DNA of 64,000 nucleotides from Oikopleura dioica (GCA_907165135.1 OU015566.1:11656001-11720000); one strand, 5' to 3'; positions 376 to 43,733 are shown, counted from the first letter of the stretch. Made by a program: numbers and translations. Notes: generated by a model not told the origin, from the sequence alone.

Positions 376-3300
376 TTAAACAGAAGGCTTCTTTACAATA
401 AGACCTTCATCTTCCATTTCTTTTTCCTTCTTCTCCTGCTCTGGAATCAGATCATCGAGCCAGCTCAATTCACGCTGATTGAAAAGTCTCGGGAAATAGT
501 CGAAAGCCTAAACAATTGTCAATGGTCGTTAAAGTCTACGTCAGACGGTAATTTGCATGTTTTTTACCTTACGTATGCCGACAATTGCGACTACCATGAC
601 GGGGAAGATGATTGAGATCGGTTTGTACGACTTGATGGCCCAGAGAACGGCCAGACCGCCGATTTGAATGATGGTGAAGAGGTGAACTTTGAGAACGGGA
701 ACGTGACGCAGGTAAATGTAGTCTAAATAAAGTGAATGTTTTAACTTGCTTAAGCAGATCAGTTATGGAGGGATAATCACCTGGGTGGTATTTCTTGGGG
801 ATGAAGAAAAGCTTGATGCGTTGGAAGAATTGAACACCGCGGAGAGAGCTGAAGCCCATGTAGAGAAAAACACCGTAGAGACAAGGCATCGGGATATTCG
901 ACAGCCACGGAGCCAGGAAAATTGAACAGCCTAAAGAAAAAGATAGGGGATCTGAAGAAAGGTTTGAAGCTTACCAATCAGAACGAAAATGCACAAACCA
1001 GTGAGTCGTTGCTCAATGCATCCGGAGAATGTATCAGGTTCACCTGGAATCTTCTGATGCGCATCTTGTTTGAGTGAGTTGACATGTGTGATGGACAAGA
1101 CAGTAGCAGCAATAAACCACGGAAGGCCGAACCAGGAACATATCATGAGCGCGATAGCGGCGACAAGCAAATCCAAGTGATAGCCGACGCCCTTTTTCAG
1201 CTTATTCTCCCTTCGATTAACAATGACAGCGGTGATTTGCTGATCCATGAAAATGAGAATCGTTCCCATAAGAGCAAACACGATGGCTAAACCGATCGAC
1301 CAGGCGGGGTTCTTGCCAAAGGGAGGAATGAACCAGCCACGATCAGACCGAGTCGGACGGAATTGATTAGGAACATGAAGTTTGGGCGTTTCCATTCCGA
1401 GAATCATGTCTACGGACACCATGGTAGCGATGGCGATTACGACGGCAAATTCGGAAATAAGGTTTCTAGCTCGGACGGAAAAATAACGCTTCTGTTTCAA
1501 TCCCTTGAGTGTGAAACTAATCGCTAGAGTTCCAAAGGCGAGGAATAGTGACACAAAGAACACATCAGGGACATAGATGTGGTTGAAGGTTTCAACTTGA
1601 TACTTCTCCAAAAAGCTCGCATCGTGAATTTGAACACCTTCATGGCTTGCCAAAGATGAAAGAATTTTATGATCAGCAGTTCCTGTGGCACTTTCTAGCG
1701 CTGCTTGATCGACTTTGTAAAGTGGGCATGATGAGCCATCGAGAACACCACAATGCATAAGGCAAGTATTGACATCTTTTTCTATCCAACTTGTTCCTTG
1801 AGTGAGGTTGACAAATTTGTAAGAGTTTCTGTAGATACAGTGGTAAGCGTTTTCACTTGCCCAAGTTCGCTCAGGTGCCGGATTCTTTCCATGCATGATT
1901 ATTCGACTAAGCGCGTCATTTTCCCAATCTTCTTCGGTCCTGTTTAGTTTCAGGTCGCTGTAATTACCAGTCGTTAGTGGTGCGTAGCAATTACAGTCGT
2001 ATGATAAAACGCCATTCCGCTCCCAGTCGAAGTTGATCTTGTTCGACTTGTAGATAGAAAAGAGCTTCTTGAATCCATCAGTGATGAAGATCAACGATAT
2101 CAGCGTTGAAAACGACTCTTCCGTAAACCGCGTTATGTACATCACAAGATAGGAAGCATCAGTAGCGACCAGAACGAAACACATTAGTCCTATAAATGTG
2201 CCGACCCAAAGCCGCAGTTCCAAGTAGTCAAGGCCAAAATCTTGCGAAATGTAGTACATGATCGTTTCAAAAACGAGGATCGGGCCTGTTGAGCCGATTA
2301 TGGTCAGTGGCTGCCCTGCGAACATGTGGAATATCGATCCGGCAATTGCTCCCCCAACCATGCTTTCCATCGCTGCGATGTTGTTGTGCGTTGCATCGGC
2401 AAGGAGACCGCCAAAAGTGATGATAGGAGTTATAACAGCAAAATACAAAAACATTATAGTAGCGATGCAGGAGGTATTGAAGCCATCGGTCCAATCAGAA
2501 AGGTACCAAGGCGCTTTTCGTCTGATATCGTTCATAAGGCCTCCAAAAAGACGTCCGGTTCGCTGTAGAGACTCATCAAGCTCATGGTCGGAGTTCTTCA
2601 ACCCTCCTGTTCCATAGCCAACGCCCTGAGAATGACCCTTGAATTCAGATGAAAACAGACGCTCCATCCCTTGATCCTTGACAACAGGTGGCTGAAGCCG
2701 GATTCGCGGATCCCACTGATTAGGCGACATGGCGACAGATGACGAAGAAAACTCATCGAATGCTTCTATAATGTGTCTGGCTTGGCTCGACGTGTACGCT
2801 ACGTTTTTCACGACCGGGTCGGCCATGATATTGCCAAAGACGCGGCCTATCTGGTGGAACTCGTCTTTGTACGATTCCTTCCCAAGGCAGACGATGACGA
2901 ATCGAGTTTCAATTGTTACTTCTGTGATTCCAGCGAGCTGTGCTGGTTTTGCAAGGCGGATGAACATGACAAGTGGTTTCTGGAGGAACTCGACGTTTCC
3001 AGTTAGAATGACGCATCCTTCTGCGCCTTCAGGAATCTTCTCGGCAAAGTGTCGCTTTACCTTCTTTTCCGTGTTCATATTGTGTTTCGTCAAGTGCTTG
3101 TAACATCGATCGGAGACGAGTTCAGACAATAAGTGAGACTATAAAAAAGTTTGATAAAAATGTTTAAATAGAAAGGGCAACATTGCGCAACGAATATCAA
3201 ATTAAAATCTTTACAAGTTTATTCAAAGATTTCGAAATAAACTCACCTTGGTGTCATCGCACGGAAAGATCTTCTCAGCATCGTGTTCGATGATGTCGTG

Positions 3301-39451: not shown

Positions 39452-40384
39452 TTAGCAAGTCAGGGCGTTGCTTTCGACAGTTCCGCCAGCGGTATTGATC
39501 GTATCAACTGCGCCGTCAAAGTCGCTGTCCAACGCCGCTGATGCAAGACCACTGTCGTTTTCGAGGCCGATGAGTACGTTGCATTGGAGGTAAGCAGTCT
39601 CGTCGTTCGCGTTGTACTTGAAGGCCTCGAAAGAAATTCCGGTGGTAAGCTTGCTGTAAGTCGAGTCAGCCGTGACCGAAGCGCCGACAGCTTCTTGAAC
39701 GCACTCTCCATAAGTGATGGTGATTGGATTGTTGGTGTATGAGTTTTCGGAATAGGCGACGCAATCTTTGACTGTGAGGAAAGCCCAGGTAGGTCCTGTG
39801 AACACGACATTGACTGTTTCGCCAAGCACCCAGGTGCTTGCGGTAGAGCCCGCATTGTCTTGGAGTTCGGCAGTGACCAAAGTATTGGTGTTGGAGTCAG
39901 AATATCCATCGAATGTCTCAGAAGCGGCGATGCCAACGTTGCCGACGTTAATGGAGAATTCGGTATCGTAAGTGCATGTAATGTCGAAAGAGAGAGCCCT
40001 AGCGACATCGATGACTTCATTTCCAGTGCCGAGCGTACGTTGAGCCCAAGTCTGTTGGCCTGCAACGGTGTATGTGCCGGTAATTTCGGTGGATGAAGTT
40101 TGGCTCATGGTGAGGTCATCCGTTATAGAGAAGTAGTCGTTGTTTTCGTGAGTCCAGCCGGCGGCTACGATCAAGGTCGCTACATTGGCAGCTAAATCGG
40201 CAGGCATCGCGTCGAAGAAATGCTCCATATCGGCTTCAATGGAAACAGTTCCATCATCATTGCAGATGAAAGAGAAGCCTGTACCAGGCTCGCAGCTACC
40301 GCTGCCAGTGGGGTCTGTCCAGCCAGTGGGGCAGGCAGCAGAAGCAAGACCAGCGACAAGGGTGAGACCGCCGAAAAGTTTCAT
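39452..40384 (-). CDS. Secreted ZP-domain-like protein, single exon, 310 aa
   Basis: Signal peptide, then ZP-like elements: LSFDITCTY, LGETVNV, LTVKDCVAY, ISFEAFKY, YLQCNVLI. No TM segment. Confidence 0.75.
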   Translation of the reverse strand: MKLFGGLTLVAGLASAACPTGWTDPTGSGSCEPGTGFSFICNDDGTVSIEADMEHFFDAMPADLAANVATLIVAAGWTHENNDYFSITDDLTMSQTSSTEITGTYTVAGQQTWAQRTLGTGNEVIDVARALSFDITCTYDTEFSINVGNVGIAASETFDGYSDSNTNTLVTAELQDNAGSTASTWVLGETVNVVFTGPTWAFLTVKDCVAYSENSYTNNPITITYGECVQEAVGASVTADSTYSKLTTGISFEAFKYNANDETAYLQCNVLIGLENDSGLASAALDSDFDGAVDTINTAGGTVESNALTC

Positions 40385-40718: not shown

Positions 40719-42422
40719 TCAGTCAAGAAAGTAATCGTTGAAGTATCTACCGAGAATAATTTTACGGACCTCAGTCGTTCCTGCACCGATTTCCATTAGT
40801 TTTGCATCTCTCATGTATCTGTTCACAGGATAGTCGTTCACGTAACCGTTACCACCAAGGATTTGAATGCCTTCTAGGGCAACTTTTGTGCATGTATCGG
40901 AGACAAACATGATGAGGGAGGCGCACTCGTGGTTCGTAATTGCTGTCAAAGAAGGTCAAAATGACTAAGTTTATTTGATAAAAATGTTTTGTAACCTTGT
41001 CTTCTGGATCTTGATCGGCACTCTTTAGCATACTGTAAAGATAAGCTCGACAGGCGGAGAGCGACGAATACATCTCGGCCATTTTTCCTTGCATTAGTTG
41101 AAACTTGCCGATCGGGCGCCCGAACTGCTTCCTTTCGTGAGCATAAGGAAAGGACTGATCAATCACAGCTTGCATAATACCAACGGGCATTGCTGAGCCC
41201 AGCAGTCTTTCAACATTCAAGCCTCGCATCAGAACAAAAGCTCCTGCCCCTTCGCCCAGAAGAATGTTTTCTTTCGGGACCTTTACGTTGTCGAAATGAA
41301 GATCACCGGTGGGAGAGCCTCGCATGCCCATTTTGTCGGGAATATGATTGGCAGTAAATCCTTCAGTTTCTTTTATCGGTTTTTGGTTCGAACTGGCTCA
41401 CTCGAGGTAAAAGATTCTGGATGAGCGAGCATGCTTGTTTTAGAAAATTCAAGCGCTACGGGTCACAGCCCGTTCCGAGAAAAAGCCGTTCCGGTGTCGA
41501 TTATAAACGCAGTGATGGAATTCCCCGCATTTGAAGATGGATCGGTCTTGGCGTAGCAGATAAGAGTATCGCAGATGGGTCCGTTTGTGATCCAGTACTT
41601 GTTCCCGTTCAAGACGTAGTAATCTTTGCCCGCTGGCTGAACAGCAGTAGTCCTCATACTCATCACATCAGATCCAGCACTTGGCTCGGTCATGGAAAGA
41701 GCGCCTATCTTTTCCCCAGAGATCAAATCTAAAGCATTAATCAAGAGAAACTCGGAAATAATGCCGGAACTCACCGGGTAGAAATTTCAATTTTTGTTCA
41801 TGAGTTCCATTTGCATCAAGAACACGGATATTAAGTGCGTTATGAGCTCTGTTAAAATGTCAATATTATTTCTATTTTCTCTACTCTACTAGAATAATAG
41901 ACACTTTCCCGTAAGACATAGAGATTGACGCAGACTTTCTGCTCAATTCCTCAGCAATTATCGCGGCAGACAAGAGCTCCATCGGGCCACTTCCTCCATA
42001 TTCTTCTGAGATGCCCGGACCATTGAGTCCCATTTTGCCCATCGTTTTCATAAAATCCCTGAAGCCGGGAAAGTCGTCATTTTTGTCAACATCGCGCAAT
42101 AAGGACTCGGGAAGCTCGCTTTCGAAAAATTTTCGAAATTGGTATCTCAGTGTGGCTTAGCTAGTAGCAGTTGGCCGCTAGCTCAATCTATTTTTAATGC
42201 TGTATAAATTTCAATCTGCTGTATAATTTATACAGTATAAATCAAGCTAGTAAGCTTTTCAGCAAGTCAGTTCCTAAGATCAATTTGTTCCTCGCTGACT
42301 CCGAACATCTTGTCCTCAATCGGAACATAATTGCTGGCGGCGCGCCTTAATCTGTGCTCCTTATTATTCCGAGATTTGAGGCGGAGAGGATTATTCAATA
42401 AGAATATTATCCGTTGCTCCAT
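40719..42422 (-). CDS. IVD: Isovaleryl-CoA dehydrogenase (acyl-CoA dehydrogenase family)
   Basis: [100 protein letters not shown]. Three GA-AG introns restore the alignment. Confidence 0.92.
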
Positions 42423-43048
42423 TTGGTACATTCAAAACGAAAACAACGTCTAAGAGACATGAGATAAGGAACACAATTCCTATATGTCGTTCGCGTGATT
42501 CTTTTCAACATCTCTCTACAGACTGTACTTATAAAGTACGAAATTTCCAATGCAGGGCGTTCACTTTGATAAACAGAAGAAGGATTGTTGACTTTATGAC
42601 ACATTTCATGCCTTTCTGATATGAAGATATTAGAAAAAACTAGAGTTTCCAACACATATGTTTTTATTCTCAATTTTTTTGACAATCAAATCGAAAAGAA
42701 AGATGAAAACAAAATAAAGTCAATGAGTGCAGATATAACTTGACGAAAATATGAAAAAATCGAGAAGGGATTTTCGGATGAAAGAAAAGAAAATCCTATT
42801 TACGTACGAACTTTTATATCGAAAAGAAAGCTGGTAAAATAAATCAATACTGCGCAAAATAACCTTTAGGGCGGAAATATGGAGGCACGTAGAAAGGGTA
42901 AAAGGCATCAGTGCAAAAAGGAAAAGGAGGCACTAAACATCAACGAGGAAGGAAGAAGTAAAAGTGGGAGGCAGTAAGAACAGGACTAGAGGAATGGAGG
43001 CACATAGAAGCGGTGAAAAAGGCATCGCGGAAAAACAGCCTGTTTTCC

Positions 43049-43733
43049 CTAAAAATTGCCACACTTGATTTGAGATGGCCTTCCGCAGATGCAGTCTTTA
43101 ACAATAAGATGGTCGAGGAACTTGTGCTCGTCGCTGTTGGAGTCTGCAATGAATCGCAAATACTTCGTGGGGTCTGTAACGGCAAAGCAGCTGTGCTGAA
43201 CCAACCTTAATTCCGGTTTCAGAAACTGTTTTTGTTAGAAAAATGAAGCTTACCCTATCTGATTGTGGACTTGTCGATGATGAAATGTTGATTGACATGT
43301 TCCGGCGCATGTTCCGATGTCAATGATTTTTTCAGCTTTTTTGACATCATTGGTGAGCCAGTTTGATAAAGAGTAGCTCGTATACTTCTCAATCACCTTC
43401 AAATATATTTTAGCTACATTTTTTATTAATAGTGTTTACATCGATTCTCAAGAAACGCTCATAGCGTTTGCATTCAGCGCTACACATCTGTTTTTTGGAT
43501 GATGGAAAAAGCAAAACATGACTGCGTCTTGCTCGTCGAATTCCAGAGTCCGCATCTGGAGTGAATCCAAAAAGAGTCTCGTAGCAAATTTTGGGAACAT
43601 GGCCATTGGTCTCAAGGCCTAAGATGTCGCCGCATGCGAGAATCGCCTGGATCGACTTTTCCAAGTCAACTTTTGCGAACACCAAGCGGGTCATTAAAGG
43701 AATCATCATCCTTAGAGTCATCGTGGGGAGCAT
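43049..43733 (-). CDS. Small secreted cystine-knot protein (TGF-beta/GDNF-like fold), three exons, about 197 aa
   Basis: Hydrophobic N-terminus and furin site RRARR. Two GT-AG introns (43398-43440, 43207-43252 approx.) join in frame to give C...CAGTC...C...CIC. Confidence 0.75.

What the first reader, a model, noticed from the sequence alone, without database searches (positions are those of the whole stretch)
43049..43733. Unannotated small furin-processed cystine-knot ligand (divergent TGF-beta/GDNF-like)
Seen: the ORF track shows only fragments, but two short GT-AG introns join them. The product has a signal-like N-terminus, a short prodomain and RRARR. The mature part of about 127 aa reads ...QMCSAECKRYERFLRID VIEKY...IIDIGTCAGTCQSTFHHRQVHNQIGLVQHSCFAVTDP...HLIVKDCICGRPSQIKCGNF. 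Established: C, CxGxC, C, CxC is the growth-factor cystine knot. A single C instead of CC marks TGF-beta members lacking the dimer disulfide (Lefty, GDF3/9, BMP15). Unusual here: a very short prodomain, a longer first finger, and two extra Cys. Inference: a lineage-specific signalling ligand that similarity searches could miss.
Basis: partly seen in the sequence, partly recalled or inferred. Interest (0 to 1): 0.75.

Follow-up and report, generated by a model that had tools for sequence, protein, structure and literature searches.

The report
Small divergent TGF-beta-like ligand gene
A real, conserved and apparently unannotated three-exon gene of the planktonic tunicate Oikopleura dioica encodes a small secreted, furin-cleavable cystine-knot protein. 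It is one of at least nine stripped-down TGF-beta-like genes in this genome, which have no dimerisation cysteine and, where it could be measured, a shortened receptor-binding 'heel'.

Summary
On the minus strand, 43733..43049, three exons joined by 43-nt and 48-nt GT-AG introns encode 197 aa: a signal-like start, a ~49-aa pro-region with two Cys, RRARR, and a 127-aa mature part with C-x3-C ... CxGxC ... C ... CxC-x7-C.

Four other Oikopleura-like lineages keep the frames, both intron positions and phases, all ten Cys and the R-x-[KR]-R site. dN/dS is 0.12-0.28.

The gene gives no exon-wise Pfam match, and its exon 2 and 3 profiles give no relevant PDB match. It is, however, a paralogue of eight more genes in this genome. 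One of these, the public but unnamed OKI2018_I69 g1017 (152 aa), matches Pfam TGF_beta over the whole domain (E 5e-5, 24.5 bits, below the cut-off of 27). It also matches only TGF-beta ligands in PDB, by sequence and by fold. A family finger-2 profile likewise hits only TGF-beta chains.

So the TGF-beta reading is the best one, but it rests on transitive, below-threshold evidence. No fold of this gene's own product was made, because the joined model was left out by rule, and no transcript was seen.

This scan had already flagged similar genes elsewhere in this genome (s1-400311, s1-338598, s1-322974, s1-352924, s1-534557).

Verdict: new variant of a known kind; interest 0.6.

The parts
43440..43733 (-). 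Exon 1 (98 codons): start codon, signal-like N-terminus, pro-region with 2 Cys, RRARR, and the first 28 mature residues including C-x3-C-K-R.
   Evidence: Conserved in L012, L014, L018 and L022. Exon-1 ORF fragments P0001, P0002, P0003 and P0007 are in public assemblies.
43671..43733 (-). Signal-like N-terminus (about residues 1-21, MLPTMTLRMMIPLMTRLVFAK).
   Evidence: Hydrophobicity scan. The window copy is weak; orthologues and paralogue B have clear hydrophobic cores. The cleavage position is inferred, not predicted by a tool.
43524..43670 (-). Short pro-region (about residues 22-70), the best-conserved part of the protein. It holds two invariant Cys (C34, C50) and ends in the basic site.
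   Evidence: Alignments A11 and A15.
43524..43538 (-). RRARR (residues 66-70), a furin-type R-x-[KR]-R site.
   Evidence: Present as RRARR or RRGRR in all gene A orthologues and as RGRR, RGKR or RAKR in gene B.
43397..43439 (-). Intron 1, 43 nt, GT...AG, phase 0.
   Evidence: Same position in all A and B genes. The same junction is used in the public Bergen model P0004 of paralogue B.
43254..43396 (-). Exon 2: second half of finger 1, the IIDIGTCAGTC ring motif, and the start of the short heel.
   Evidence: hhalign against P0009 gives P 1.5e-7.
43206..43253 (-). Intron 2, 48 nt, GTAAG...AG, phase 2.
   Evidence: Against L014 it is 67% identical with a 3-nt indel, while the exons are 78-82% identical.
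43049..43205 (-). Exon 3: the single Cys at the 'CC' position, finger 2, ...HLIVKDCIC, a 7-residue spacer, the final Cys, GNF, and the stop (43049-43051).
   Evidence: hhalign of gene A finger 2 against the rest of the family gives P 4.5e-5.
42990..43048 (-). Conserved block just 3' of the stop (probable 3' UTR), beginning with a near-palindrome.
   Evidence: 88% identity to L014, against 78-82% in the exons. Part of a motif repeated at 42879-42918 and 42994-43035. Function unknown.

Best explanation
The locus is a functional three-exon gene ('gene A') of Oikopleura dioica (Okinawa assembly OKI2018_I69, chr1) for a 197-aa pre-pro-protein of a larvacean family derived from the TGF-beta superfamily.

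Proposed mechanism, with each step marked:
1. A signal peptide directs secretion (inferred).
2. The short, highly conserved pro-region with its own Cys pair helps the knot to fold (inferred by analogy with TGF-beta and NGF pro-domains).
3. A furin-type convertase cuts after RRARR. The site is shown and conserved; cleavage is inferred.
4. The 127-aa mature domain folds as a growth-factor cystine knot: C88 pairs with the single Cys, and the CAGTC ring pairs with CIC. The pattern is shown; the pairing is inferred.
5. A fourth disulfide between the extra N-terminal Cys (C84) and the extra C-terminal Cys staples the two ends (inferred).

The interchain Cys is absent, and the segment between CxGxC and the next Cys is 19 residues instead of about 30. 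The protein should therefore not form the covalent dimer, and it should lack much of the wrist/heel that builds the type I receptor site. I take it to be a monomeric or non-covalently associated ligand that acts as a modulator or antagonist, or signals non-canonically.

Odds: about 0.7 for a secreted TGF-beta-derived cystine-knot protein; about 0.3 for the monomer/antagonist mode in particular.
For: Gene reality:
- Frames, splice sites and phases, ten Cys and the basic site are kept in five lineages. dN/dS is 0.12-0.28.
- The acyl-CoA dehydrogenase neighbour is syntenic.

Family:
- A DNA pattern for D-[IV]-G-x-C-x-G-x-C gives 11 sites in the genome against 0 for the reversed control. Nine of the sites are genes with the same single-Cys and CxC-x5..8-C layout.
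- Paralogue B shares all three exons and both intron positions.
- Profiles built from the gene A and gene B exons align colinearly to paralogue C (P0009) at residues 39-54, 62-92 and 137-152, with P 0.0049, 1.5e-7 and 0.011. This includes the identical CxC-x7-C end.
- Gene A finger 2 against the rest of the family gives P 4.5e-5.

Link to TGF-beta:
- P0009 against Pfam TGF_beta gives E 5e-5 over profile positions 2-104.
- All 9 PDB sequence hits are activin or GDF5; the best is 4mid at E 6.8e-4, with CQRHPKQVD aligned to CKRHPLYVD.
- Foldseek on two AF2 models of P0009 gives a top 50 made up entirely of TGF-beta ligands, best E 2.4e-3 and 3.4e-3. Finger 2 is modelled at pLDDT 81-85.
- The family finger-2 profile hits 14 of 14 TGF-beta-family chains (E 0.025). 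Without the gene C rows it hits 6 of 6 TGF-beta2 chains (E 0.052).
- The ESM Atlas model of P0004 has TGF_beta clusters as its nearest structures. This is a lead only.

Mechanistic analogy and receptors:
- Engineered mmTGF-beta (C77S plus heel helix deleted) is a monomer that binds TGFBR2, cannot recruit TGFBR1 and inhibits signalling (bioRxiv 10.64898/2026.03.23.713733).
- The genome has at least one GS-domain type I receptor.
Against: - Gene A's own exons give no Pfam match at E <= 10. Its exon 2 and exon 3 profiles (with B) give no relevant PDB match; the only PDB hits are short chance-level matches to ferredoxins, cullins and a luciferase subunit.
- PF00019 run over the genome does not light up this locus.
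- Every link to TGF-beta is below curated cut-offs (24.5 against 27 bits; no Foldseek E <= 1e-3) and passes through a paralogue.
- Both AF2 models of P0009 are poor outside finger 2 (mean pLDDT 42 and 47), so no knot was actually modelled.
- No model of gene A's product was made.
- No spliced transcript or full-length protein for gene A was found in the databases.
- [VI]-D-[IV]-x-x-C-x-G-x-C also recalls C-terminal cystine-knot (CTCK) domains such as vWF. This is from my own knowledge and was not tested.
- The window copy's signal peptide is weak.
- Receptor binding, monomer state and antagonism are pure inference.
Confidence: 0.7

Rival explanations
1. It is a secreted cystine-knot protein of another class (CTCK, DAN/gremlin or glycoprotein-hormone type) or an independent knot family. 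The TGF-beta-like motifs of paralogue C would then be convergence or chance.
For: - The heel is short (19 residues in A, 14 in B, 5 in D), as in hCG-beta or DAN-type knots rather than TGF-beta (spacings; the comparison is from my own knowledge).
- An extra Cys follows CxC, as in CTCK domains.
- The xIDIGxCxGxC motif resembles the vWF/mucin CTCK ring region (own knowledge).
- Gene A itself has no TGF_beta Pfam hit.
Against: - Pfam scans at E <= 10 of every exon and of P0009 return TGF_beta only; Cys_knot, DAN and hormone families never appear.
- The informative PDB sequence and fold hits (gene C and the family finger-2 profiles) are all TGF-beta ligands.
- Finger 2 has the same length as in BMP2 (31 residues) and ends in ...IVKxCxC as in TGF-beta2.
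- The C-[KQ]-R-x-P...D start and the upstream R-x-[KR]-R site fit TGF-beta precursors.
Confidence: 0.12
2. It is TGF-beta-derived in origin but no longer a receptor ligand. It would be a structural or defensive secreted protein, for example a component of the larvacean house or mucus, or an antimicrobial or toxin-like knot peptide. That would explain the large, fast-evolving family.
For: - At least nine divergent paralogues have different finger and heel lengths, a pattern common in effector or structural families.
- The type I receptor-binding heel is lost.
- A ZP-C domain secreted-protein gene lies 3 kb away. This is only a neighbourhood hint.
Against: - Single-copy orthology with moderate-to-strong purifying selection (dN/dS 0.12-0.28) and a strongly conserved pro-region and cleavage site fit a processed signalling molecule.
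- There are no repeats and no extreme composition.
- No expression data point either way.
Confidence: 0.12
3. It is not a functional gene: a chance arrangement of ORFs or an unexpressed relic.
For: No transcript, EST or annotated product containing exon 1 was found.
Against: Open frames, splice sites, phases, ten Cys and the basic site are conserved between lineages whose synonymous sites are saturated (pS 0.73-0.91 in the window versus L018/L022 comparisons). Third-position bias is clear and dN/dS is 0.12-0.28.
Confidence: 0.03

Closest known systems
TGF-beta superfamily ligands without the interchain cysteine (GDF9, BMP15, GDF3, Lefty)
   Same: A basic convertase site precedes a C-terminal knot domain. 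It has C ... CxGxC ... C ... CxC with a single Cys at the CC position, finger 2 of the same length as BMP2, and ...IVKxCxC as in TGF-beta2. Like Lefty (own knowledge), the chain continues beyond CxC.
   Different: The pro-region is about 49 aa instead of about 250, with no TGFb_propeptide match. Finger 1 is about 11 residues longer and the heel about 11 shorter. An extra Cys pair sits at the two ends of the mature domain. There is no Pfam hit for this gene.
Oikopleura dioica Oidioi.mRNA.OKI2018_I69.chr1.g1017 (P0009) and the other paralogues B and D-I
   Same: The same 8-Cys frame: C-x3-C-[KQ]-R, xIDIGxCxGxC, and CxC-x7-C at the end. All are secreted and small.
   Different: g1017 has no pro-region or furin site and has four exons with introns at other positions. 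It is publicly annotated but unnamed, whereas gene A appears unannotated. Identity to gene A is only about 16-25% in finger 2.
Engineered mini-monomer mmTGF-beta2-7M (PDB 5TX2, 5TX4, 5TY4)
   Same: It has no interchain Cys and the heel is removed or shortened. These chains are the top PDB hits of the family finger-2 profile. The engineered protein is a monomeric competitive inhibitor, and its folding is helped by a pro-domain.
   Different: It is man-made from TGF-beta2. The natural family is far more divergent, and its receptor binding is unknown.
GDNF-family ligands
   Same: Small precursors (about 200 aa) with a short pro-region and an R-x-x-R site (own knowledge).
   Different: GDNF ligands keep the CC pair and a full heel helix. 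No search here returned a GDNF-family protein.
CTCK, DAN and glycoprotein-hormone cystine knots
   Same: CxGxC ring, short loop after the ring, and an extra Cys after CxC (own knowledge).
   Different: No Pfam or PDB match to any of them at E <= 10. They lack a convertase-cleaved pro-region and usually carry more Cys.

Membership tests
TGF-beta superfamily (Pfam PF00019 TGF_beta) | Match to the family profile above the curated cut-off (27 bits) | tested here: not met
   Gene A's exons scanned one by one give no hit at E <= 10. The genome-wide PF00019 search does not hit the locus. Paralogue C (P0009) reaches 24.5 bits, E 5e-5, over profile positions 2-104. The joined product of gene A was not scanned (rule).
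TGF-beta superfamily (Pfam PF00019 TGF_beta) | Six knot cysteines: C ... CxGxC ... C ... CxC near the C-terminus | tested here: met
   C88; C30-A-G-T-C34 of exon 2; C6 and C38-I-C40 of exon 3. All are invariant in five lineages and in the paralogues.
TGF-beta superfamily (Pfam PF00019 TGF_beta) | Convertase site R-x-[KR]-R between pro-region and mature domain | tested here: met
   RRARR or RRGRR in A; RGRR, RGKR or RAKR in B. Cleavage itself was not tested.
TGF-beta superfamily (Pfam PF00019 TGF_beta) | Large latency-type prodomain (TGFb_propeptide) | tested here: not met
   The pro-region is about 49 aa and has no Pfam match.
TGF-beta superfamily (Pfam PF00019 TGF_beta) | Interchain cysteine (first C of CC) for the covalent dimer | tested here: not met
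   A single Cys (...QHSCFAV...) in every orthologue and paralogue. Also absent in GDF9, BMP15, GDF3 and Lefty (own knowledge), so this does not exclude membership.
TGF-beta superfamily (Pfam PF00019 TGF_beta) | Two-finger plus heel-helix fold with the knot at the base | tested here: inconclusive
   Gene A's joined product was not folded (rule). Paralogue C: AF2 mean pLDDT 42 and 47, with only the finger-2 hairpin confident (81-85). The Foldseek top 50 are all TGF-beta ligands, but the best E values are 2.4e-3 and 3.4e-3 over about 40 columns. The heel segment is 19 residues against about 30.
GDNF-family ligands | Seven Cys including CC, full heel helix, similarity to GDNF, neurturin, artemin or persephin | tested here: not met
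   There is no CC, and no GDNF-family chain appears among any PDB sequence or fold hits.
CTCK / DAN / glycoprotein-hormone knots (Pfam Cys_knot, DAN, Hormone_6) | Match to those family profiles, and 9-11 Cys patterns | tested here: not met
   No such family appears at E <= 10 in any scan of exons or of P0009. Only 8 Cys are in the mature part.
Larvacean small TGF-beta-like family (genes A-I, defined here) | C-x3/4-C-[KQNA]-R start, [IV]D[IV]GxCxGxC ring, single Cys, CxC-x5..8-C end, small secreted precursor | tested here: met
   hhalign gives P 1.5e-7 (exon 2 against P0009) and 4.5e-5 (finger 2 against the rest of the family).

The most novel reading that the evidence does not exclude
Larvaceans have evolved and expanded (at least nine genes) a class of natural 'mini-monomer' TGF-beta ligands. 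These have no interchain cysteine, a truncated heel, ends stapled by a new disulfide, and in part a miniature Cys-containing pro-region. They would act as endogenous competitive antagonists or as ligands for non-canonical receptors. Candidates for such receptors are the kinase-less and dead-kinase TGF-beta-receptor-like genes noted elsewhere in this genome by this scan (s1-390078, s1-331769, unchecked). This would rewire TGF-beta signalling in an animal known for heavy loss of developmental genes.
Probability: 0.2. Interest if true: 0.8.

Novelty: new variant of a known kind. Interest (0 to 1): 0.6.

Why it matters
Oikopleura is a chordate model known for losing developmental signalling genes. 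An uncounted family of tiny, highly divergent TGF-beta-like secreted proteins would change the inventory of its signalling ligands, because most of them are invisible to Pfam and this one seems to be missing from the public annotation.

Their architecture has no dimer cysteine and a shortened heel. It mirrors an engineered TGF-beta monomer that works as a receptor antagonist, so they offer a natural test of whether monomeric knot ligands can regulate the pathway.

The practical result is a corrected gene model plus eight paralogous loci for annotation and for expression and knock-down studies.

Tried and rejected
- **Pfam on each exon** of gene A and its orthologues and paralogues: blank.
- **PDB sequence search** with the exon 2 and exon 3 profiles of A and B: blank, or chance hits to ferredoxin and cullin.
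- **Word search and the all-against-all HMMER search** with exon 1: only family ORF fragments and one spurious repetitive bacterial protein, P0006. No spliced full-length product turned up.
- **JGI metagenome scan:** only two loci of an already known lineage.
- **Fragment MSAs for AF2:** one MSA mixing all exon fragments with P0009 was misaligned by MAFFT, which stacked finger 1 on finger 2, and was discarded. MSAs holding only finger 1 or only finger 2 were used instead.
- **AF2 of paralogue C:** poor outside finger 2, so the knot and the proposed end-to-end disulfide could not be checked.
- **Weak exon-1 look-alike at C4:1978523** (L011, E 2.7): no matching ORF, dropped.
- **Pattern sites L034 (in-frame stop) and L035:** not family.
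- **Literature searches:** no paper describes such a family in Oikopleura.
any search, Pfam scan or fold of the joined (spliced) product of gene A or of its spliced paralogues.

Full report
**What is in the sequence**

The gene lies on the minus strand.
- Exon 1 is 43733..43440 (98 codons).
- A 43-nt GT-AG intron follows (43439..43397).
- Exon 2 is 43396..43254 (47 codons plus 2 nt).
- A 48-nt GTAAG...AG intron of phase 2 follows (43253..43206).
- Exon 3 is 43205..43049 (51 codons plus TAG).

The product has 197 residues. It starts with a signal-like stretch and a pro-region of about 49 residues holding two Cys, then RRARR at residues 66-70. The mature part of 127 residues has this Cys spacing: C-x3-C, 39 residues, CAGTC, 19 residues, C, 31 residues, CIC, 7 residues, C, 3 residues.

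The genome has 64.28 Mb in 19 contigs. A paralogue's public name shows that it is Oikopleura dioica OKI2018_I69. The window is G000:C4:11656001-11720000.

**Is the gene real?**

Exon-1 ORF fragments occur in public assemblies (P0001, P0002, P0003, P0007). Their contigs carry the whole gene.
- L012/L013 are about 94% identical in DNA.
- L014 is about 80% identical.
- L018-20 and L022-24/L026 are about 55-58% identical in protein.

All of them keep the three open exons, GT-AG introns at the same positions and phases, all ten Cys and the R-x-[KR]-R site.

Against L014, intron 2 is 67% identical with an indel, while the exons are 78-82% identical. Against L012, differences in exons 2 and 3 fall 0/1/5 and 0/1/8 on codon positions 1/2/3. 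Nei-Gojobori estimates, computed exon by exon and summed as counts, give dN/dS of 0.12, 0.28 and 0.22. Synonymous sites are saturated in the deepest pairs. An acyl-CoA dehydrogenase gene lies downstream in the window, in L012 and in L023.

The gene is therefore under purifying selection as a protein. No transcript was seen.

**Annotation state**

Searches able to see proteins of 59-224 aa returned only raw ORF fragments for this gene. The same tool returned the OKI2018_I69 product of a paralogue. 'Unannotated' is therefore likely, but not proven.

**Direct family searches on the gene**

The joined product was never built, searched or folded. I say so here because it limits the verdict.

Exon-wise, Pfam is blank at E <= 10. 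PDB sequence searches with the exon 2 and exon 3 profiles are blank or show chance hits. PF00019 run over the whole genome hits three canonical TGF-beta genes and one weak locus, but not this one.

**Paralogues**

- **Gene B.** Exon 1 finds a paralogue on C5. It has the same three exons, the same intron positions, RGRR and the same eight mature Cys. Its Bergen orthologue is the public 'unnamed protein product, partial' P0004, which joins exons 1 and 2 exactly where I place the junction.
- **Gene C.** The weak PF00019 locus is annotated as Oidioi.mRNA.OKI2018_I69.chr1.g1017 (P0009, 152 aa). It has C-x3-C-Q-R, KFIDIGACGGIC, a single Cys, and CSC-x7-C as its last residues. This is the frame of gene A, but without a pro-region.
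- **Genome-wide pattern.** A DNA pattern for D-[IV]-G-x-C-x-G-x-C gives 11 sites in the genome against 0 for the reversed control. Nine of them are genes of this type: A, B, C, D (C4:4054052), E (C1:6599035), F (C1:11515939), G (C4:10073342), H (C5:3028772) and I (C5:9790125). For E to I an adjacent finger-2 exon ends in CxC-x5-C; in D the single Cys lies in the ring exon and a short last exon ends in CxC-x8-C.
- **Shared architecture.** F and I also show a signal peptide. F has a short pro-region with two Cys, and I has an RRKR site.

hhalign places the A/B exon profiles colinearly on P0009: exon 1 at residues 39-54 (P 0.0049), exon 2 at 62-92 (P 1.5e-7) and exon 3 at 137-152 (P 0.011). Gene A's finger 2 matches the finger 2 of all the other members at P 4.5e-5.

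**Link to TGF-beta**

- P0009 matches Pfam TGF_beta over profile positions 2-104 at E 5e-5 and 24.5 bits. This is under the 27-bit cut-off.
- All nine of its PDB sequence hits are activin or GDF5. The best is E 6.8e-4 over residues 40-144, aligning CQRHPKQVD with CKRHPLYVD.
- Two AlphaFold2 models of P0009 are poor overall (pLDDT 42 and 47). With a finger-2 alignment of the family, residues 107-146 form a confident hairpin (pLDDT 81-85).
- In both Foldseek searches the 50 best PDB chains are all TGF-beta-family ligands. No E value reaches 1e-3 and most alignments cover only about 40 columns.
- A finger-2 profile of 14 family sequences hits 14 PDB sequences, all TGF-beta2/3, BMP10 or activin (best E 0.025). 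Without the gene C rows, six of six hits are TGF-beta2, through ...IVKxCxC (E 0.052).
- The ESM Atlas model of P0004 has TGF_beta clusters among its nearest structures at TM 0.24-0.34. This is a lead only.
- No scan ever returned CTCK, DAN, glycoprotein-hormone, PDGF, NGF or GDNF-family proteins.

**Reading**

The most likely account is that gene A is a member of a larvacean expansion of very small, very divergent TGF-beta-derived cystine-knot proteins. Compared with BMP2 (own knowledge of its sequence), finger 2 has the same length (31 residues), finger 1 is about 11 residues longer, and the heel is about 11 shorter (19 against about 30). The interchain Cys is missing. A new Cys pair sits four residues before the first knot Cys and seven after the last, where the chain ends meet, so an end-to-end disulfide is plausible.

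The conserved basic site and the pro-region suggest a processed precursor whose pro-piece helps folding. The pro-region is the best-conserved part of the protein.

A protein without the dimer Cys and most of the heel resembles the engineered mmTGF-beta. That protein is monomeric, binds the type II receptor, cannot recruit type I and so inhibits signalling, and its folding is improved by a pro-domain (bioRxiv 10.64898/2026.03.23.713733). The genome has at least one GS-domain type I receptor.

The antagonist or modulator mode is my preferred mechanism, but it is inference only.

**Rivals**

- **Another knot class, or an independent family.** The short heel, the extra C-terminal Cys and a ring motif reminiscent of CTCK argue for it. 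All profile and fold hits argue against it.
- **A TGF-beta-derived but non-signalling secreted protein.** The size and diversity of the family argue for it. Selection on the cleavage site and pro-region argues against it.
- **A non-functional ORF.** Conservation contradicts this.

**Novelty and earlier notes**

Searches of the paper library found no description of such a family in Oikopleura.

This scan had already flagged look-alike genes elsewhere in this genome (s1-400311, s1-338598, s1-322974, s1-352924, s1-534557). I did not see their coordinates, but my pattern search independently recovers a family of that kind. They are leads, not support.

I rate the finding a new variant of a known kind, with interest 0.6. 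The gene model and family are solid. The TGF-beta assignment is probable but below threshold. Function is open.

Noticed in passing
window 39452-40384 (-): An intronless 310-aa ORF with a signal-like start. Pfam Zona_pellucida (ZP-C) gives E 6.4e-6 and 26.7 bits, above the cut-off of 24.6. It is a small secreted ZP-C protein gene about 3 kb from gene A.
   Followed up: partly
window 42879-43048: The block just 3' of the stop (42990-43048) is better conserved between lineages (88% to L014) than the coding exons, and starts with the near-palindrome GGAAAACAGGCTGTTTTTCC. A two-part motif of 25 and 19 nt is repeated 115-117 nt apart at 42879-42918 and 42994-43035. It may be a 3' UTR regulatory element; this was not tested.
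   Followed up: partly
window 40719-42099 (-): Exons of an acyl-CoA dehydrogenase gene lie immediately downstream of gene A. The same neighbour occurs in L012 and L023, so synteny is conserved across lineages.
   Followed up: partly
G000:C4:4054052 (L031/L037), C1:6599035 (L032), C1:11515939 (L033), C4:10073342 (L038), C5:3028772 (L040), C5:9790125 (L042): Six further small genes of the same family (D-I). Gene D is a miniature of about 127 aa with only 5 residues between the ring and the next Cys. Their full gene models and annotation state were not worked out.
   Followed up: partly
L017 (Bergen O. dioica FN656909.1) 2582-3211: The public model of paralogue B (P0004, 'unnamed protein product, partial') stops after exon 2. 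Exon 3, with the CxC end, is present at 3080-3208, right at the end of the scaffold.
   Followed up: yes
G000:C2:10921305-10921364: This is the only TGF_beta_GS (type I receptor) match found in the genome by the six-frame family search (E 1.1e-5). The search gives lower bounds only.
   Followed up: no
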